From positions 1 to 64,000 of the forward strand of contig JAHLWZ010000857.1 of assembly GCA_020536535.1 (NCBI GenBank): a DNA stretch of 64,000 nucleotides, given 5' to 3'. The notes under the pieces are model-generated. The model made no database searches. It had not been told where the DNA came from and saw only the letters and a program-made list of their open reading frames with translations. Source of the DNA: Pelomyxa schiedti. Taxonomy: Eukaryota; Protista; Evosea. Below are positions 26,808-33,375 of this stretch, one piece after another; the first letter of the stretch is position 1; each line of letters opens with the position of its first letter. The position numbers and the translations under genes were made by a program.

Positions 26808-29800
26808 ATGGCCAGCGCACCAAAGACCACAACACTGAGATCCAGTGACGGTTGCGAAGTGGTTGTGACGAGCACACCATTGGACACACCGACATTTGTA
26901 CCGGGGGACCCTCTGGGCTACGTGTACAAGGGAATGAAGTACAAGGACAAGGTGGCGTACGCGGCTCTTTCGCGCATGCAATCTGCTGCTGCTCCTACTT
27001 CTGCTTCTGCTTCGGCAAATTGTGGGACGGTGGCTACTACTGCCGAAAAGGATCTGTCGTTCTCCTCGGTGAAGGCGGAGATACGCGATTTTGGAGGGTA
27101 CAAGTGCGTGTGGATCAGCCACGACCAGTCATTTTTCAACGGCACTATTGGATGCGTGGAGGGCGAAGTAATGGCAAGGGCATTGGAGAAGGCCTACGAG
27201 TTGAAATTACCTTTGGTTTTATCTTGCTCGGGTGGTGGTTTACGAATTCAAGGTACGGTTTTGACTTTTTTTTTCCACTTTCCACTCTCCACTTCCTCCT
27301 CTCTTCGTTATGAACTCACTCTCTTTTCACAGAGGGTTCTTTTCCTATTCATGAGATGGCAAAGTACTTTACCATTATGAGCAAACTGAAAGATGCCGGC
27401 ATGCATCTTATACCCTCAATAAATCTAGTAACAAAACTTAGGAATTCCAACAATTAGTATCTTCAATAATCCGTCCCTTAGTGCAGCCACTGTCTATGGA
27501 TCGGCTTCAGATATAACAATAGGTTTAAGGAGCGCACGTATTGGAATTTTCGAGGAGCTGGAAATTCTTGAAACAGTATTCAAAGGGGATTATGCACCTT
27601 ATGATGTCACTTGTCCGCCTGCTTTTCAGACATCCCAATTCGTTTATGACAATGGCAGGCTAGACATTATCGTAGACCACGAAAACAGTGAATACTTACG
27701 CAAGTTATTACACATAGTTTCTGAGGGGAGGAGAGTGTGGCACGATACACCCAGATCTGAAATCAAGGCAATGCTAGAAGCAAAACTTGCTGAGCGCCCA
27801 TTAGTACCTCCCAGGATGGAAGTCGATTTTGATCTTGTTAAACTCCGTGATATGGGGAGAATACAAGTACAAGATTGCCTTGACCTTCTATTTGAGGAAT
27901 TCGTAGAGTTACATGGAGATGGAAATAACAGGTCAAATACATGTACCCGTGGAGGAGTTGCGCTTCTTAATGGACTCCCTGTGATGGTTATTGGTACAGA
28001 TAAGGGCCATACCCCAGAATTGATTGTTCAACGTAACTACGGAATGGTAAGCCCTGGGGACTTGCGCTTTGCTCGTAGGATTTTGCATATTGCTAGGCGA
28101 TGGAGATTCCCCTTGATTGTTCTGGCCGATTGCCCAGGAGCCTTGCCCACCTTTGAAAGCGAAGAAGGTGGTGTCTACAAAATAATCTCAGAGCTAAATC
28201 TTGGAATGACAAAGAGTAAAGTTCCAGTTATATCCTTCGTTCTTTCCGAAGCTGGGAGTGGTGGTGCCGCATGTTTATGCAATCATACCGACTCGCTTGT
28301 TATTCTTTCAAATGCCTATTTTGGAGTTATGACACCAGAGGCAGCAGCGTCAGTCCTTGGAGGAAGCACACCCAATATGGAACAAGGGGAGTTGATCAAC
28401 AAGATTATGAGTGCTCTGCAATTCCGGGGCCCCCAGCTTTTCAAGATGGGTCTGGTTGATCAAATCGTGCAAGAAGGAGAAACCATAAAAGAAACCATCG
28501 ATCAAATGAGAGCCTGCTTCTTTGCAGCTCTTGCCCCGCTCGTAGAGTTATCTCCTCAGGAACTGGTGGAAAAGCGCTTTCACAAATTCCGACCTTTACG
28601 TAAATCACTTCAAGAAGTGGGTGGTGAAGAAATGGAAGCCTTAATGAAAGAGTTCCAGAATGCTCTTAAAGCTCCACCACCTGCCAGACCAAGTACCCGA
28701 GGAAAACCTACCGGGCCTTCTAATGGAGTCACTACTGCTACTCCTGCCTATATGAGGTTTTTATCTGAAATGACGCTATTGGGGCTCAAGAAGTTTGACA
28801 CTGAGGGTAACGACGATGCTAAAAATGTGGAAGCTATAGAGGCCAAGCTTCCGAAGTTCGTGTTTGAAAAGCAAGACCTAGATCCCAGCTACCCAACCAT
28901 AAAGGCAATTCTTGACGGTTCAGGACCAGCAGCAGTTTCACAGTGGTTGATATTGCAAGGTCCCCACCAAGTTTTCTTCTCTGACACATCTTTGTGTGAC
29001 GGCCAGCAGTGTTTACTTTCTGGCCACGTACGTACACGCGATCTACTTGCTGTAGCAGATATCTTTTCACACACAGTGCTTGTAAACAGCAGCTCTCTTT
29101 TCTCCCTAGAGATTTGGGGGGAGGAAGTATTCCACTCATGTCTGACTACTCTTAATGAAGATCCTTGGGAACGCCTGAGACTCCTCAGAGCTTCACTACC
29201 ACAACATGTGGCACTTCAAATGGTGTTGAGTGGAGATTCCCTTGTTTCATTGAGTAAACAACCACGAGACGTAGCTCGTATATTTATCACAGCGGCCGCC
29301 AGGAATGGGATTGATGTGTTTAGGATTTATGACAATTTCAACAACGTGTCCAATATGATGGAAATTGCAGCCATCGTAAATGAATGCCAAAAAATTTCTG
29401 AACTGACAATCTGTTTCTGTGGGGACTTTGAGAACGAAACAGAGACAGTCTACACCTTGGATTACTATAAGGTTCATTGACTATTTGTTAACCAAGTGCA
29501 CTGACTTGTTACAGAGGTTAGCTAACTCTATTTCAAAAACGTGTGCCCATATTCTTGCCCTGGAGGACATGGCTGGAATTGTTAAACCGTCACATGCAGC
29601 TCCACTCCTGGCTGCTCTTCGGGAAGCTTCCGGCAACCGACTACCTATTCACTTTCATACCCATGACACCACTGGTGTTGGGCTTCAAACCGTTATCTCC
29701 ATGGTAGAAGAAGGGTGCGAAATCGTTGATGTATGCGTTCCCCAGTGTATGGCTGAGACCCCTTCACAACCATCCCTCAGCGCCCTCGCTCTTACTCTTA

Positions 29801-31041
29801 AATGCATAGCTTGTCCGCGAGAGGTTCAAGTAGACGCACCTTCACTTGCAGAGATGGACAGTGCCTGGAGGGGAATACTCCGCGCTCCATGGTATTCCAA
29901 GTTGAACGTACACCATTGTCCATCCACAGCTGCTTACAGTCATGCCCTACCTGGGTGGCAGTACAATACTATGTACCGTAAATGCCAGCGAGAACACATA
30001 GAACACCTCATTCCCCAAGTGCTGGTAGCATACAAACAAACCGATTTAGCACTAGGTCGGATCATCAAAGTTACAGCAGTCAGTACCGCTGTGCTGGATC
30101 ACGCCATACACAGTGTCGTTAAGGGAGTGGATGCGACAACCGCACTGTTGGCAGACAAAATATGTCCCATTCCGCAAACTGTGAAGGACATGCTGAATGG
30201 TGTCTATGGAATGCCGGAAGCTGGTTTTCCTGCTGGAATTCTTTCCGCCACAGCCTCCAACCCCTTGAAGCATGGGGCACCACCAGAGTTAGACCTGGAA
30301 AATGTTTCCAATAGGGTCAAAAAAGCTTTCCCCAATGCCCCTACCCCAACTCCTATGGAGTACATCCTGAATGCTGCTCTTTTCAATGATGCCTATCTCG
30401 TTCAACATGCCAAATGGGTGAACCACTATGGTACACTCACGTCGGGAATTCCATCAAGGGCCTTCTGGAGTGGGATGCCGGTGGGGTCGTCAGTTCATAT
30501 CCACAACTACTCGTCCTTATCCGGAAACCACTGCCCACCCTCCTCACTGCTCCCTGCGTACGTCCCCCCCAATCTGTCCCCCTCACTCCTGCCGAGTCCG
30601 TCGCCAGGGTTCCCCACAATTTCTCCCATAGTCCTCATCTCGCACTCGCCCACCCTTTGCCGCTCCCGCTCCCCGTCACCATCACCCATCCCCTCACCCT
30701 GCGTGTCCCCAAGCATACCGCCCGTATCAATCACACCACTTCTGACCCCCTCCATCTTCCCCGTGTCGCCGAAGCTCCCCTCTCCCTGCCTATCTCCCAT
30801 CCCTGTACAGTCCGCGTCCGCTTTAGCCGAAGCCAAGCTTCTGTCCGCAGAGACCCCTCAGATCCTCACTCTGAAGCTCAACAGAGTTTCGCCAGCAACA
30901 CGGACTGGTTCTCGCACAGTCTCGTTCCAGTTGGATGGAAAGGACACTTTTGACTATAATGACGAGGGTCCCCAGGCAAGTATTACTCAAAGCTCATTCA
31001 TTGACATCAGGACAATCCTTTCAAACGTGGGTTTGTTGTGA
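26808..31041 (+). CDS. AccD-AccA-pyruvate carboxyltransferase (PycB/OadA TIM-barrel) fusion, transcarboxylase-like, lacking a biotin carrier domain
   Basis: AccD: GDPLGY..MKYKDKV, HDQSFFNGTIGCVEGE, SGGGLRIQEG, FQTSQFVYDNGRLDIIVD. AccA: FVELHGD, RNYGMVSPG, DCPGA, SEAGSGGA, YFGVMTPE. PycB: LEIWGE, EDPWERLRLLR, NGIDVFRIYD, EDMAGIVKP, IHFHTHDTTG, IIKVT. Confidence 0.88.
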
Positions 31042-31088
31042 GGAGAAAAAAAGGCAGTAAGAAAAAGAAAAAACAGTTTTTTTTTTGT

Positions 31089-33375
31089 CTATGGGAAGTT
31101 GACAGACAAGGCCAAAGGCACAAGAGAATCAGTGACAGCATTTCCCAAGTCAGCCCCCTCTGCTTGTATTTCCGTAAACAAATTACTGAAATAGTGTTGA
31201 TCCTGGATAGAAATTAGCATTGGGAGCACAGTTATGTGCCAAACTTGGTGTAGCTGGTCCTGAATCCCTGTGAGGCATTGTGTGAGTTTCTCTGTGTCTG
31301 GTCCACAATCTGGCAGTGAATCCGCTAACATTGTGTAATGCTGTTGAACAGACTGCAAAATAAACTCAAGGCGGGCAAGTTTCTCCACTTCTTTGGCTTC
31401 AGAAAGGAAAAAGAAATAAGTGTGAACTTACATTCTTCATCTGTAGCTCTGTCCAAGTTCTTACCAAGATTCACTCTGTGAAATCGCGCACGGTTGTCGA
31501 GCTCTCCTTGGTATCTCAATGTGGTTTCTTGGGTAGCCTTTTTTTTTTTGTTATTTTTTCTTTTTTTCACCTTGTGCCAGTAACCACAGTAATGTCTTTG
31601 GGTAATTGGCCAAGAACAGTTTTTTCTTCTTCACAAAAAGCATCCAAATTCTTAGTGCTTTCTGGTACAGTCAAAATGTGTACGAGGAGTGGGAAGAATA
31701 CCAATGAAATCCCTTTGAGAACTGTTCAATGAAACAATACTGTGCCCGGCATGTTTGTCATTGAGGCATTCCTCACAGACAGCACTTTCACAACTTGTGC
31801 ATATTAATGTTATGGCTATGTCTGTATGCACTGGACAGGTAGAGGTATCAGTGACTGTGTGCATTTTTAATGGAAGAGGCTTTATATGACGTCAACGTGT
31901 AGAAAGAATGAAGTGAGTGTTTACCTTGTGGCGTGACCATTTTGGGCCAGAGTGCCTTCTTGCATAACAGCAATCACAAAAAATGAGGCCTTTACAGAAT
32001 GCAATACTGTTGCACGTCTTAGTTCCTTGTGCTGAGTCTTGACAATTAGGGAGATTGCATGACGGGCCACCACTCTGGTTCCCCATTAGGGGCAGAAATA
32101 TGAATTTGAGCTACCAGATATCTTTTCACTTGCTCATTCACTTCCCTGAGCAGCGTATTTTGTTGTGCTGTCGGTGCTTTTTTTTTTAAACAAAAACATT
32201 CAGAAAATAAGACTATACTATTTACAGGTGAGTTCAGCAATTTGATAACAGATAGGACAATTGAAACATCTTGGTGGAGAAGTCTGGCAAGACACGAGGA
32301 TAAGCAGAAATGCGATAAAATATATAGATATTATGTAAAGAGAGACTGAGAATCAAACCTCGGTCACAGGGAATATTGTTAGCATATCCGCTACGCACTT
32401 GCGGCAAAAAATGTGACCACAGGACACTACCACGGGGTCTAAGTACATGTTGAAGCAGCACCCGCACGTCAAGTACCTTGAACCGGAGGTGCCGTTACCT
32501 GCCGAAACAGCCTCATCCGAAAGGAAGACATGTTCTCCTGCCGTAGCCTCGCCCATTCCACCGTGCTTTTCTATTACTATTCCTAGCTCAGTACTCTTCA
32601 CACCCATAAGTGTGCCTGCGCTTGTGCTTGTGCTTGTGCTTGTGCTTGTGCTTGCGCTTGCGCTTGGGCTTGGGCTTGGGCTTGGGCTTGGGCTTGGGTT
32701 TGTGATTGTGATTGTGTTATTTACGTTTGCACTTGCTTTCATCGTGCTTGTGCCGGTACTTGGAACAGGTGGCAAGGCCTGGGAGATTGATGAGAATGAC
32801 GGGCTAGCAGGAACCGTCCTAGAAGTGATGGGCAGCGGGGGCAGAGGCTTAGAGCGCACCACAAAAGCGTCTCCCATCACACCCAGTGCGGGGCTCATGG
32901 GAGTCGCCCTGGGCGCCGCCGCCGGTGTCGGCGGAGACAAGGGCCTTGCAGTCGTCGTCGTGGTCGTCGTCGTCGCCGTTGTTGTCGCCGCTGGTTCTGC
33001 CGGGAAGGAACACAGGGCCGTGGGGATTGGGCGAAGGAGAGCGGGCGGGGACAAGGCCCGCATGGGTGTGCCCGGAGGGTACGGCGAGGGTGAGGGCGAG
33101 GCGCAGGGGGAGAAGGGAGGCGGCATCCTGGGGAGCGCACGGAGGTCGACGGGAGGCGGCATGTCCGCGGCGGTGACGGGGGACCGAGGCGGGGGCGCCG
33201 CGGGGCCCCGGGCGAAGGGGGGCGGCGCCCGAGGCGCCACTATCGCGGGCACAACAACGTGGGGCACAACAGGCGCCACGTAAGGCAGCGGGACAACCAC
33301 AGGAATCGCAGGGGGCCCCTGCTCATTAGCCACTGGAGGCACTGAGGCCCCGTTGCCGCTCAAGTTGGGATCCAT
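31089..33375 (-). CDS. TRIM/RBCC-like protein: Pro-rich N-terminus, RING, B-box1, B-box2, coiled coil (multi-exon)
   Basis: RING CGCC...SCGHIFCRKC...CPIC. B-box1 CNLPNC...C...FCDCCYARRH...H. B-box2 CPVH...LICTSCESAVCEEC...KHAGH. Helical C-terminus. Confidence 0.82.
32620..32697. repeat. Coding hexamer microsatellite (GTGCTT)n-(GCGCTT)n-(GGGCTT)n
   Basis: Tandem hexamers encoding PSPSPS-ASAS-TSTSTS in the TRIM gene. Confidence 0.85.

What the first reader, a model, noticed from the sequence alone, without database searches (positions are those of the whole stretch)
26808..31041. Single-chain transcarboxylase-like fusion (AccD + AccA + pyruvate carboxyltransferase)
Seen: bacterial-type AccD and AccA halves followed by a PycB/OadA TIM barrel in one spliced ORF of about 1250-1300 aa, with no biotin-carboxylase (ATP-grasp) domain. 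Known: this order matches the Giardia acetyl-CoA carboxylase/pyruvate carboxylase fusion, proposed as an ATP-independent malonyl-CoA:pyruvate transcarboxylase, and parallels the Propionibacterium 12S/5S subunits. Inference: an ATP-saving carboxyl shuttle of anaerobic protists, or a derivative of one. It could feed malonyl-CoA to reductases like the FabG in this window, which is speculative.
Basis: partly seen in the sequence, partly recalled or inferred. Interest (0 to 1): 0.75.

Follow-up and report, generated by a model that had tools for sequence, protein, structure and literature searches.

The report
Carrier-less, crippled copy of protist transcarboxylase
This amoeba gene is a real, expressed fusion of three carboxyl-transfer parts, but it has lost the biotin-carrying arm and several key working residues that all its relatives keep. 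It is therefore most likely a non-working or re-purposed copy, not an energy-saving carboxyl shuttle.

Summary
Window 26808-31041 (+) is one four-exon gene of 1355 aa, identical to GenBank KAH3745809.1 'Pyruvate carboxylase [Pelomyxa schiedti]'. Its order is AccD-like, AccA-like, then the pyruvate-carboxylase carboxyltransferase (TIM barrel plus PYC_OADA). There is no ATP-grasp domain. RNA contigs confirm all three introns, one of them GC-AG, and run unspliced through the stop codon.

The gene groups with the Giardia, Entamoeba and Monocercomonoides single-chain transcarboxylases in both domain trees. Unlike every one of them, it has no biotinyl carrier domain.

Its TIM site has lost the carbamylated lysine (KDMAG is EDMAG), both substrate arginines (to Cys and Ser) and 15 more otherwise invariant residues that its sister keeps. 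Its AccD motifs are also altered.

The sister paralog in the same genome (KAH3757164.1, 45-46% identity, two shared intron positions) keeps the carrier domain and the core TIM catalytic residues. After duplication the window copy's TIM domain changed about eight times as much (1.12 vs 0.14 changes per site). A third, canonical copy ('Pelo_58') is in the published protein table.

Best reading: an expressed, fold-preserving pseudoenzyme or re-purposed paralog that cannot work as a transcarboxylase alone. The scan also noted the active-site changes and missing carrier on this stretch, and noted the sister gene elsewhere in this genome.

The parts
26808..27252 (+). Exon 1 (aa 1-149, first base of codon 149): N-terminal region and first part of the AccD-like carboxyltransferase half
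   Evidence: Gene model, identical to P0065. RNA contig X1#1 covers 26853-27250. Pfam Carboxyl_trans starts at aa 83.
27253..27332 (+). Intron 1, 80 nt, GT-AG, phase 1, after ...GGGLRIQ
   Evidence: Spliced out in RNA contig X1#1. The sister gene has an intron at the same position and phase.
27333..27398 (+). Exon 2, a 66-nt exon within the AccD-like half
   Evidence: The sister gene has an exon of the same 66-nt length (L001 6988-7053).
27399..27441 (+). Intron 2, 43 nt, GC-AG, phase 1
   Evidence: RNA contig X1#1 skips 43 nt here. The joint can slide by up to 2 nt, and sliding by 1 gives GC..AG. The sister gene has a 45-nt GT-AG intron at the same position.
27442..29471 (+). Exon 3 (aa 171-847): rest of the AccD-like half, the AccA-like half (aa 306-555 = 27846-28595), a poorly conserved linker (aa 556-654 = 28596-28892), and the first half of the TIM barrel from aa 655 (28893)
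   Evidence: One continuous open frame. ACCA 3.4e-50. Matches to solved AccA, AccD and pyruvate carboxylase structures.
27480..27485 (+). AccD motif DPTxGG reads NPSLSA: the conserved Gly-Gly is Ser184-Ala185
   Evidence: Alignment with 15 fusions and bacterial AccD-AccA proteins. The sister has Gly-Ala.
27546..27554 (+). AccD motif (I/V)GFAGP reads IGIFEE (Ile206, Phe207, Glu208)
   Evidence: This change is specific to the window copy; the sister has VGFSGV.
28995..29012 (+). TIM motif DTTxRDxHQS reads DTSLCDGQQC. Cys689 replaces the pyruvate-binding Arg (R. etli Arg548). Asp690 and Gln693 are kept. Cys694 replaces the invariant Ser.
   Evidence: RNA contigs X1#3 and X2#9 cover these codons with no differences.
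29229..29252 (+). TIM motif RGxNxVGY reads SGDSLVSL. Ser767 replaces the R. etli Arg621 equivalent and Leu774 replaces the Tyr628 equivalent.
29472..29514 (+). Intron 3, 43 nt, GT-AG, phase 0, inside the TIM barrel (after ...DYYK)
   Evidence: Spliced out in contigs of three libraries: X1#3, X2#11 and X3#12. The sister gene has no intron here.
29515..31041 (+). Exon 4 (aa 848-1355 plus stop): second half of the TIM barrel, the PYC_OADA helical domain (aa 988-1176 = 29935-30501), a disordered insert, three PT-like strands, and a short tail
   Evidence: RNA contig X3#12 runs unspliced from 29513 to 31163.
29563..29565 (+). Glu864 in place of the carbamylated metal-ligand lysine (KDMAG reads EDMAG; R. 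etli Lys718)
   Evidence: HMMER alignments to R. etli and Listeria pyruvate carboxylase. It is unique among 155 homologs scanned. Three RNA contigs cover it without differences.
29650..29658 (+). His893 and His895 (HFHTHD), the two metal-ligand histidines, both retained
30067..30087 (+). Motif KVTPSSK reads KVTAVST. Thr1034 (R. etli Thr882) and Ser1037 are kept. Pro, Ser and Lys (Lys886 equivalent) are replaced.
   Evidence: Numbering derived from the 4jx4 alignment.
30526..30873 (+). Pro/Ser-rich low-complexity insert (aa 1185-1300), predicted disordered and kept in the mRNA
   Evidence: AlphaFold2 pLDDT below 50 for aa 1185-1300. RNA contigs X2#11 and X3#12 cross it unspliced. The sister has only about 20 residues here.
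30871..31041 (+). Three beta-strands (aa 1300-1329) matching the strands that precede the carrier domain in relatives, then a 26-aa tail and the stop. There is no biotinyl domain.
   Evidence: Pfam finds nothing in aa 1180-1355 at E up to 1. A tblastn of carrier domains against the window is blank.

Best explanation
This gene is a diverged paralog of the protist single-chain transcarboxylase (AccD-AccA-pyruvate carboxyltransferase-biotin carrier). After a DNA-level duplication within the Pelomyxa lineage, it lost the carrier domain. It also lost the residues that make the pyruvate/oxaloacetate site work: the carbamylated lysine, both substrate arginines and neighbouring invariant residues. Two AccD motifs changed as well.

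Shown: the domain order, the missing carrier, the substitutions, the sister relationship, the asymmetric rates, the splicing and the expression.

Inferred: it cannot move a carboxyl group between oxaloacetate and acetyl-CoA on its own, so it is not a working transcarboxylase. Its 4-kb frame is intact. Its fold is predicted with confidence. It still keeps universally invariant positions more often than other positions. So selection still maintains it as a folded protein.

The most likely role is a non-catalytic subunit. These enzymes work as oligomers, so I infer that it pairs with its carrier-bearing sister (KAH3757164.1) or with the canonical copy, as a scaffold or modulator.
For: The gene model equals the public protein, and RNA contigs confirm the three introns and the stop.

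Carrier domain. The 12 other fusion proteins complete at the C-terminus all carry a biotinyl domain. They come from Entamoeba, Giardia, Spironucleus, Kipferlia, Monocercomonoides, Paratrimastix, the sister paralog and metagenomes. The window protein's C-terminus has no Pfam match at E up to 1, and nothing carrier-like lies anywhere in the 64 kb.

TIM site. Of 75 TIM/PYC_OADA columns invariant in 12 fusions plus 7 true pyruvate carboxylases, this protein differs at 25 and the sister at 8, with 7 shared (Fisher p = 0.0014). Among 155 homologs, EDMAG, Cys at the Arg548 position and Ser at the Arg621 position each occur only here.

Published roles. Arg548 and Gln552 bind pyruvate. The homologous lysine of oxaloacetate decarboxylase is the proposed carboxyl acceptor. 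Removing the carrier domain abolishes biotin-dependent activity in R. etli pyruvate carboxylase (PMC5895798).

Trees. In the TIM tree the two Pelomyxa copies are sisters (100/100), with tips of 1.12 and 0.14 changes per site. In the CT tree they are sisters (100/100), with tips of 0.92 and 0.82. Two introns share position and phase and flank an identical-length 66-nt exon.

Continued constraint. The protein keeps 49 of 67 columns that are invariant in all others and kept by the sister. It matches the sister at only 214 of 430 other columns (p = 0.00035). AlphaFold2 gives pLDDT around 90 across the TIM and helical domains, and Foldseek gives TM 0.92 to a pyruvate carboxylase CT chain.

Precedent. 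Plant BADC proteins are non-catalytic paralogous subunits of a biotin enzyme (PMC11926652).
Against: There is no biochemical evidence of any kind.

Four metal-site positions can still supply ligands: Asp690, Glu864, His893 and His895. Glutamate offers the same kind of group as a carbamylated lysine. Thr1034, the essential Thr882 equivalent, is kept. So a changed activity is not excluded.

The carboxyltransferase oxyanion holes use backbone amides (from my own knowledge), so Gly-Gly to Ser-Ala need not abolish activity.

Hetero-oligomer formation with the sister is inference only.

No ortholog from another species is available, so purifying selection could not be measured by dN/dS.

No RNA contig bridges 28290-28457 or 28618-28875. 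A single transcript across the AccA-to-TIM linker therefore rests on the continuous open frame.
Confidence: 0.55

Rival explanations
1. It is still an active carboxyltransferase subunit that borrows a biotin carrier in trans from its sister or from the canonical copy in a mixed oligomer. Its remodelled TIM site (Asp/Glu/His/His metal site with new Cys689 and Cys694) would act on a substrate other than pyruvate/oxaloacetate.
For: A carrier-less R. etli pyruvate carboxylase subunit regains activity when mixed with a carrier-bearing partner (PMC5895798). Asp690, His893, His895, Gln693, Thr1034 and Ser1037 are retained, and Glu864 could replace the carbamate ligand. The two Pelomyxa paralogs share a long common stem (1.5-1.8 changes per site) and 18 shared departures in CT motifs, which suggests a function already changed before duplication.
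Against: The arginine of the DTTxRD motif is replaced, and so is the second substrate arginine. From my own knowledge, that arginine stabilises the enolate throughout this TIM-barrel metallolyase superfamily. The window-specific AccD changes (GG to SA, GFAGP to GIFEE) hit the other active site too. The eight-fold rate asymmetry in the TIM domain fits loss of catalytic constraint better than fine-tuning.
Confidence: 0.22
2. It is a biotin-independent enzyme. One option is a malonyl-CoA (or other acyl-CoA) decarboxylase using only the AccD/AccA-like half, as the MdcD/MdcE subunits of malonate decarboxylase do. The other is a metal-dependent lyase or decarboxylase using the TIM half.
For: The CT half evolved at the same rate as the sister's (0.92 vs 0.82) and keeps the SGGA motif. 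Pfam gives a faint MdcE match (E 0.08). That biotin-independent CT homologs exist is from my own knowledge.
Against: The MdcE match is far below its cut-off and is expected from shared ancestry alone. The AccD motifs are the most altered part of the CT half. Nothing in the window suggests a matching pathway.
Confidence: 0.1
3. It is a transcribed pseudogene on its way to decay, or the missing carrier is an assembly or annotation artefact.
For: The carrier and catalytic residues are lost. The protein is known from one genome only, with no closer relative than 45-46% among 5.8 billion proteins.
Against: The 1355-codon frame is intact despite about one change per site since duplication. Invariant positions are still kept preferentially (p = 0.00035). 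All introns are correctly spliced, and RNA contigs match the genome through the stop codon with no differences. A gene on the opposite strand begins about 50 nt downstream, so no carrier exon was missed.
Confidence: 0.08

Closest known systems
Protist single-chain transcarboxylase. This is the acetyl-CoA carboxylase/pyruvate carboxylase fusion of Entamoeba histolytica (Barbosa-Cabrera et al. 2012; Clark et al. 2007, as cited in PMC8136499), Giardia (Jordan et al. 2003, as cited in PMC3199775), Mastigamoeba, Monocercomonoides ('malonyl-CoA:pyruvate transcarboxylase') and Spironucleus.
   Same: Same domain order (AccD, AccA, pyruvate carboxyltransferase TIM barrel, PYC_OADA, PT-like strands) and no biotin carboxylase. 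It falls inside this clade in both domain trees.
   Different: It has no C-terminal biotinyl domain. The carbamylated lysine, both substrate arginines and further invariant TIM residues are replaced, and AccD motifs are altered. It shares only 28-33% identity with these enzymes.
Its sister paralog in the same genome, KAH3757164.1 (1468 aa, P0066; locus L001 6001-10646)
   Same: 45-46% identity. They are sisters at 100/100 support in both trees. They share two intron positions and a 66-nt exon, and 18 shared departures from conserved CT motifs.
   Different: The sister keeps a biotinyl domain (PF00364, 29.5 bits, AMKM lysine), KDMAG, both arginines, PGGQY and KVTPSS. Its TIM domain changed only 0.14 per site after duplication, against 1.12 here.
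Pyruvate carboxylase carboxyltransferase domain (R. etli 4jx4, Listeria 4qsl, L. lactis 7zz6). This is also the source of the gene's public name.
   Same: Homologous over about 520 residues (E 4e-75). The predicted fold superposes at TM 0.92 and rmsd 2.5-2.7 A. The Asp and two His metal ligands, Gln552 and Thr882 equivalents are kept.
   Different: It has no biotin carboxylase and no carrier domain, so it is not a pyruvate carboxylase. The Lys718, Arg548, Arg621, Tyr628 and Lys886 equivalents are replaced.
Propionibacterium shermanii transcarboxylase (12S, 5S and 1.3S subunits)
   Same: The TIM half is homologous to the 5S subunit (1rqb, E 3e-21 and 1e-10). The concept of ATP-independent carboxyl transfer between a keto acid and an acyl-CoA is the same.
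   Different: The CT half is AccD/AccA-type, with only a weak match to 12S (1on3, E 1e-06). There is no 1.3S-like carrier.
Plant BADC proteins, the non-biotinylated and non-catalytic BCCP paralogs of heteromeric acetyl-CoA carboxylase (PMC11926652)
   Same: A paralog of a biotin-enzyme component that has lost the feature needed for catalysis, yet is kept and acts within the complex. This is the model for how the window protein may work.
   Different: BADC derives from the carrier protein, whereas this protein derives from the two transferase modules. No interaction has been shown for the window protein.

Membership tests
Protist single-chain transcarboxylase (AccD-AccA-PC carboxyltransferase-BCCP fusion) | Domain order: AccD-like, AccA-like, pyruvate carboxyltransferase TIM barrel, PYC_OADA | tested here: met
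   Pfam domains in this order. Full-length alignment with 9 fusions.
Protist single-chain transcarboxylase (AccD-AccA-PC carboxyltransferase-BCCP fusion) | Common descent with the Giardia/Entamoeba fusions in both halves | tested here: met
   The fusion clade has 100/99 support against pyruvate carboxylases and against bacterial AccD-AccA proteins. The window protein lies inside it both times.
Protist single-chain transcarboxylase (AccD-AccA-PC carboxyltransferase-BCCP fusion) | No biotin carboxylase (ATP-grasp) domain | tested here: met
   No such Pfam family. A tblastn of a BC domain against the window gives only noise.
Protist single-chain transcarboxylase (AccD-AccA-PC carboxyltransferase-BCCP fusion) | C-terminal biotinyl carrier domain with the biotinylated lysine | tested here: not met
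   No Pfam match in aa 1180-1355 at E up to 1. No beta-sandwich in the model. RNA reads through the stop. Nothing carrier-like in 64 kb. All other full-length fusions have it.
Protist single-chain transcarboxylase (AccD-AccA-PC carboxyltransferase-BCCP fusion) | Intact pyruvate/oxaloacetate site: Asp, carbamylated Lys, two His, two Arg, Gln and Thr | tested here: not met
   Lys to Glu864, Arg to Cys689, Arg to Ser767. Asp690, Gln693, His893, His895 and Thr1034 are kept.
Protist single-chain transcarboxylase (AccD-AccA-PC carboxyltransferase-BCCP fusion) | Conserved acyl-CoA carboxyltransferase motifs (AccD DPTxGG and GFAGP; AccA GQSEAIA and GEGGSGGA) | tested here: inconclusive
   26 of 79 conserved columns differ, and 18 of these are shared with the sister. 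GG to SA and GFAGP to GIFEE are window-specific. SGGA is kept. The functional effect cannot be judged from sequence.
Protist single-chain transcarboxylase (AccD-AccA-PC carboxyltransferase-BCCP fusion) | Catalyses oxaloacetate + acetyl-CoA to pyruvate + malonyl-CoA | not testable with these tools
   Needs an enzyme assay. Activity has been reported for the E. histolytica enzyme (cited in PMC8136499).
Pyruvate carboxylase (the public annotation of this gene) | Biotin carboxylase domain, carboxyltransferase domain and biotinyl domain in one chain | tested here: not met
   Only the carboxyltransferase part is present. True pyruvate carboxylases in the same searches carry PF02786, PF00289 and PF00364.
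Propionibacterium-type transcarboxylase (12S/5S/1.3S) | 12S-type (PccB-like) acyl-CoA carboxyltransferase together with a 5S TIM subunit and a 1.3S carrier | tested here: not met
   5S homology is present (E 3e-21). The CT half best matches AccA and AccD (E 2e-32 and 2e-18) and matches 12S only at 1e-06. There is no carrier.

The most novel reading that the evidence does not exclude
The window protein and its carrier-bearing sister form an asymmetric two-paralog complex, separate from the canonical transcarboxylase of the same amoeba. In it the window protein is a dedicated non-catalytic partner. Alternatively it is a metal- or redox-sensing partner, through its Asp/Glu/His/His site flanked by two new cysteines. 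It would shape or regulate the sister's activity on a substrate pair different from oxaloacetate and acetyl-CoA. I know of no described pseudoenzyme subunit derived from the transferase modules of a biotin enzyme.
Probability: 0.2. Interest if true: 0.6.

Novelty: new variant of a known kind. Interest (0 to 1): 0.45.

Why it matters
Anaerobic protists that lack acetyl-CoA carboxylase are thought to make malonyl-CoA with this fusion enzyme (PMC8136499). Counting every 'AccD-AccA-PC' gene as a working transcarboxylase, or as a 'pyruvate carboxylase' as the public record does, would misstate their metabolism.

Pelomyxa schiedti appears to have three copies in different states. One is canonical. 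One is diverged but keeps the carrier and core catalytic residues. The third, in this window, is carrier-less and lacks key catalytic residues. This series shows how a multi-domain biotin enzyme can be dismantled while the protein itself is kept. It gives a concrete candidate for a non-catalytic subunit that can be tested by co-expression.

It also flags that the 'pyruvate carboxylase' in the published organelle map of this amoeba starts with AccD-type sequence, so it is probably a transcarboxylase.

Tried and rejected
1. A downstream carrier exon. I looked for one because CAG|GCAAGT near 30975 resembles a GC donor site. I rejected it for three reasons. RNA contig X3#12 is unspliced from 29513 to 31163. 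The sister gene has no intron at the matching place. A tblastn of carrier domains against the window is blank.

2. The Pro/Ser-rich stretch (30526-30873) as an unannotated intron. Rejected, because two RNA contigs cross it unspliced.

3. Word-index searches. The search with the 676-aa exon-3 piece found only bacterial AccD-AccA proteins, because of the length limit. The search with the fusion alignment was swamped by pyruvate carboxylases. The full HMMER scan and a full-length word search found the fusions.

4. My own recall that the essential Thr882 lies in the TSQPS motif was wrong. Counting along the 4jx4 alignment puts it in KVTPSSK, where the window protein keeps it (Thr1034). I therefore make no claim from the one-residue insertion next to TSQPS that both Pelomyxa copies share.

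5. dN/dS was not attempted. The only close relative is 45-46% identical, so synonymous sites are saturated.

Three papers on pyruvate carboxylase catalytic residues were not held. One literature search was too broad to be useful.


Full report
THE GENE. Window 26808-31041 (+) holds three long open frames in different phases. Joining them at three short introns gives a 1355-aa protein. The exons are 26808-27252, 27333-27398, 27442-29471 and 29515-31041. The introns are 80 nt (GT-AG), 43 nt (GC-AG) and 43 nt (GT-AG). The product is identical to database protein P0065, which is GenBank KAH3745809.1, 'Pyruvate carboxylase [Pelomyxa schiedti]'. Earlier notes of this scan had already pointed to that amoeba.

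RNA EVIDENCE. Contigs from four single-cell RNA libraries, all from one study and one sample, lie on the gene with no sequence differences. They show all three joints as modelled. For the second intron the joint can slide by up to 2 nt, and sliding by 1 gives GC..AG. One contig runs unspliced from 29513 to 31163. That span covers the Pro/Ser-rich stretch and the stop codon at 31039-31041. No contig bridges 28290-28457 or 28618-28875. A single transcript across the AccA-to-TIM linker is therefore supported by the uninterrupted frame of exon 3, not by a spanning contig.

DOMAINS. Pfam finds Carboxyl_trans (aa 83-477), ACCA (306-555, E 3.4e-50), HMGL-like (833-922) and PYC_OADA (988-1176). It finds no ATP-grasp family. 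Solved structures agree:
- AccD subunits match aa 100-262 (E 1.6e-18).
- AccA subunits match at E 2e-32.
- Pyruvate carboxylase carboxyltransferase domains match aa 655-1176 (E 4e-75).

An AlphaFold2 model of aa 640-1355 has pLDDT around 90 over the TIM barrel and the helical domain. It is disordered over aa 1185-1300, then has three strands at 1300-1329. Foldseek places it on pyruvate carboxylase CT chains (TM 0.92, rmsd 2.5-2.7 A to 7zz6).

RELATIVES. A full HMMER scan of 1.8 billion cluster representatives found the protein itself and a second P. schiedti protein, P0066 = KAH3757164.1 (1468 aa, 46% identity). It also found about ten full-length fusions at 31-36% identity. A word search with the whole protein added four more. 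The named ones are:
- Entamoeba invadens
- Paratrimastix pyriformis
- Spironucleus salmonicida
- Kipferlia bialata
- Giardia muris
- Monocercomonoides exilis, labelled 'malonyl-CoA:pyruvate transcarboxylase'

Nothing closer than P0066 turned up among 5.8 billion proteins.

The literature treats this fusion as the source of malonyl-CoA in Entamoeba and Mastigamoeba, through transfer of a carboxyl group from oxaloacetate to acetyl-CoA (PMC8136499).

In a tree of the TIM/PYC_OADA part, the fusions form one clade against seven true pyruvate carboxylases (100/99). In a tree of the CT part, they form one clade against six bacterial AccD-AccA proteins (100/99). The two Pelomyxa proteins are sisters in both trees (100/100). 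Homology with the Giardia/Entamoeba enzyme is therefore established.

WHAT IS MISSING. Every other fusion that is complete at its C-terminus ends in a biotinyl domain. The sister's domain scores 29.5 bits for PF00364 and carries an AMKM lysine. The window protein stops 26 residues after the strands that precede that domain in the relatives. Four checks show the carrier is truly absent:
- Its last 176 residues match no Pfam family at E up to 1.
- No beta-sandwich appears in the model.
- A tblastn of two carrier domains against all 64 kb gives only noise.
- A RING/B-box gene on the opposite strand begins about 50 nt downstream.

The carrier is characteristic of the whole biotin-enzyme family, transcarboxylases included (PMC3199775). 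Deleting it abolishes biotin-dependent activity in R. etli pyruvate carboxylase (PMC5895798).

THE TIM ACTIVE SITE. Residue numbers below are for R. etli pyruvate carboxylase, derived from the 4jx4 alignment.
- Replaced: Arg548 to Cys689, Arg621 to Ser767, Tyr628 to Leu774, Lys718 to Glu864, Lys886 to Thr1038.
- Kept: Asp549 = Asp690, Gln552 = Gln693, His747 and His749 = His893 and His895, Thr882 = Thr1034, Ser885 = Ser1037.

Published roles were checked where papers were held. Arg548 and Gln552 bind pyruvate. Thr882 is essential. The lysine homologous to Lys718 in oxaloacetate decarboxylase is the carbamylated residue proposed to receive the carboxyl group. The other roles come from my own knowledge.

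Of 75 columns invariant in 12 fusions and 7 pyruvate carboxylases, the window protein differs at 25 and the sister at 8, with 7 shared (Fisher p = 0.0014). RNA contigs cover these codons without differences, so they are not assembly errors.

THE CT HALF. Here both Pelomyxa copies are about equally diverged (tips 0.92 and 0.82) on a long shared stem of 1.81. Of 79 conserved columns, the window protein differs at 26 and the sister at 23, with 18 shared. One shared example is AccA GQSEAIA, which reads GVYKIIS here and GVYQSMA in the sister. The window copy alone changes the AccD Gly-Gly to Ser-Ala and GFAGP to GIFEE. Whether this abolishes activity cannot be told from sequence.

HISTORY. The sister gene (L001 6001-10646) has introns at the same two positions and phase as the window gene's first two introns. 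In both genes they flank a 66-nt exon. The sister lacks the window gene's third intron. The duplication was therefore at the DNA level. After it, the TIM domain of the window copy accumulated 1.12 changes per site, against 0.14 in the sister.

The window copy is not simply decaying. Its 1355-codon frame is intact. It keeps 49 of 67 universally invariant columns, while matching the sister at only 214 of 430 other columns (p = 0.00035).

A THIRD COPY. The supplementary protein table of the P. schiedti genome paper lists 'pyruvate carboxylase (PC), Pelo_58'. The part of its sequence shown there begins with canonical AccD motifs (GGSLGCAEGEK, SGGARMQEG, DPTYGGTTASYA, RIGFAGE). These are very like the Entamoeba enzyme (compared). 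The amoeba therefore very probably also has a canonical transcarboxylase. I could not bring that sequence into the tools, so this rests on reading the table.

INTERPRETATION. The gene belongs to the protist transcarboxylase lineage by descent. It fails two defining features of a working enzyme of that kind: it has no carrier, and its keto-acid site is incomplete.

The best-supported reading is an expressed paralog that keeps its fold but has lost transcarboxylase activity. It most likely serves as a non-catalytic partner of its sister or of the canonical copy. Non-catalytic paralogous subunits are known in biotin enzymes, for example plant BADC proteins (PMC11926652). Carrier-less subunits can sit in mixed oligomers (PMC5895798).

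The main rival is that it remains active with a borrowed carrier and a remodelled metal site. The retained ligands, and the chemical similarity of glutamate to a carbamate, keep that open. The loss of both arginines argues against it. A biotin-independent activity and a dying pseudogene are less likely.

The proposed supply of malonyl-CoA to the FabG gene in this window has no support.

VERDICT. This is a new variant of a known kind and of moderate interest.

Noticed in passing
window 27399-27441: A 43-nt GC-AG intron, confirmed by an RNA contig. The sister gene has a GT-AG intron at the same position.
   Followed up: yes
PMC8887013 Additional file 1, Table S2, entry Pelo_58 (not in this window): The protein listed as 'pyruvate carboxylase (PC)' and weakly predicted to be in the mitochondrion-related organelle starts with canonical AccD motifs, not a biotin carboxylase domain. 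It is probably the canonical transcarboxylase ortholog, so the pyruvate-to-oxaloacetate step drawn in that map may be wrong.
   Followed up: partly
window 31089-33375 (- strand): The downstream gene on the opposite strand encodes B-box-like zinc fingers and a RING finger, with long Pro/Ser/Thr-rich low-complexity runs (a TRIM-like layout). Its 3' end lies within about 50-120 nt of this gene's stop, so the two 3' UTRs may overlap.
   Followed up: no
window 30526-30873: A 116-residue Pro/Ser-rich insert sits between the helical domain and the last strands. It is transcribed and predicted disordered. The sister has only about 20 residues at this point.
   Followed up: partly
L001 6001-6313 (sister gene): The sister paralog has an N-terminal extension of roughly 120 residues that contains an extra 149-nt intron. 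No other fusion has this extension. Its role, possibly targeting, is unknown.
   Followed up: no
window 27442-28595 and L001 (both Pelomyxa paralogs): Both paralogs share departures from motifs that are otherwise conserved across the fusions and bacterial AccD-AccA proteins (for example GQSEAIA, GEGGSGGA, SPEGxASIL). They also share a long common stem (1.5-1.8 changes per site). The pair may have changed function before the window copy degenerated.
   Followed up: partly
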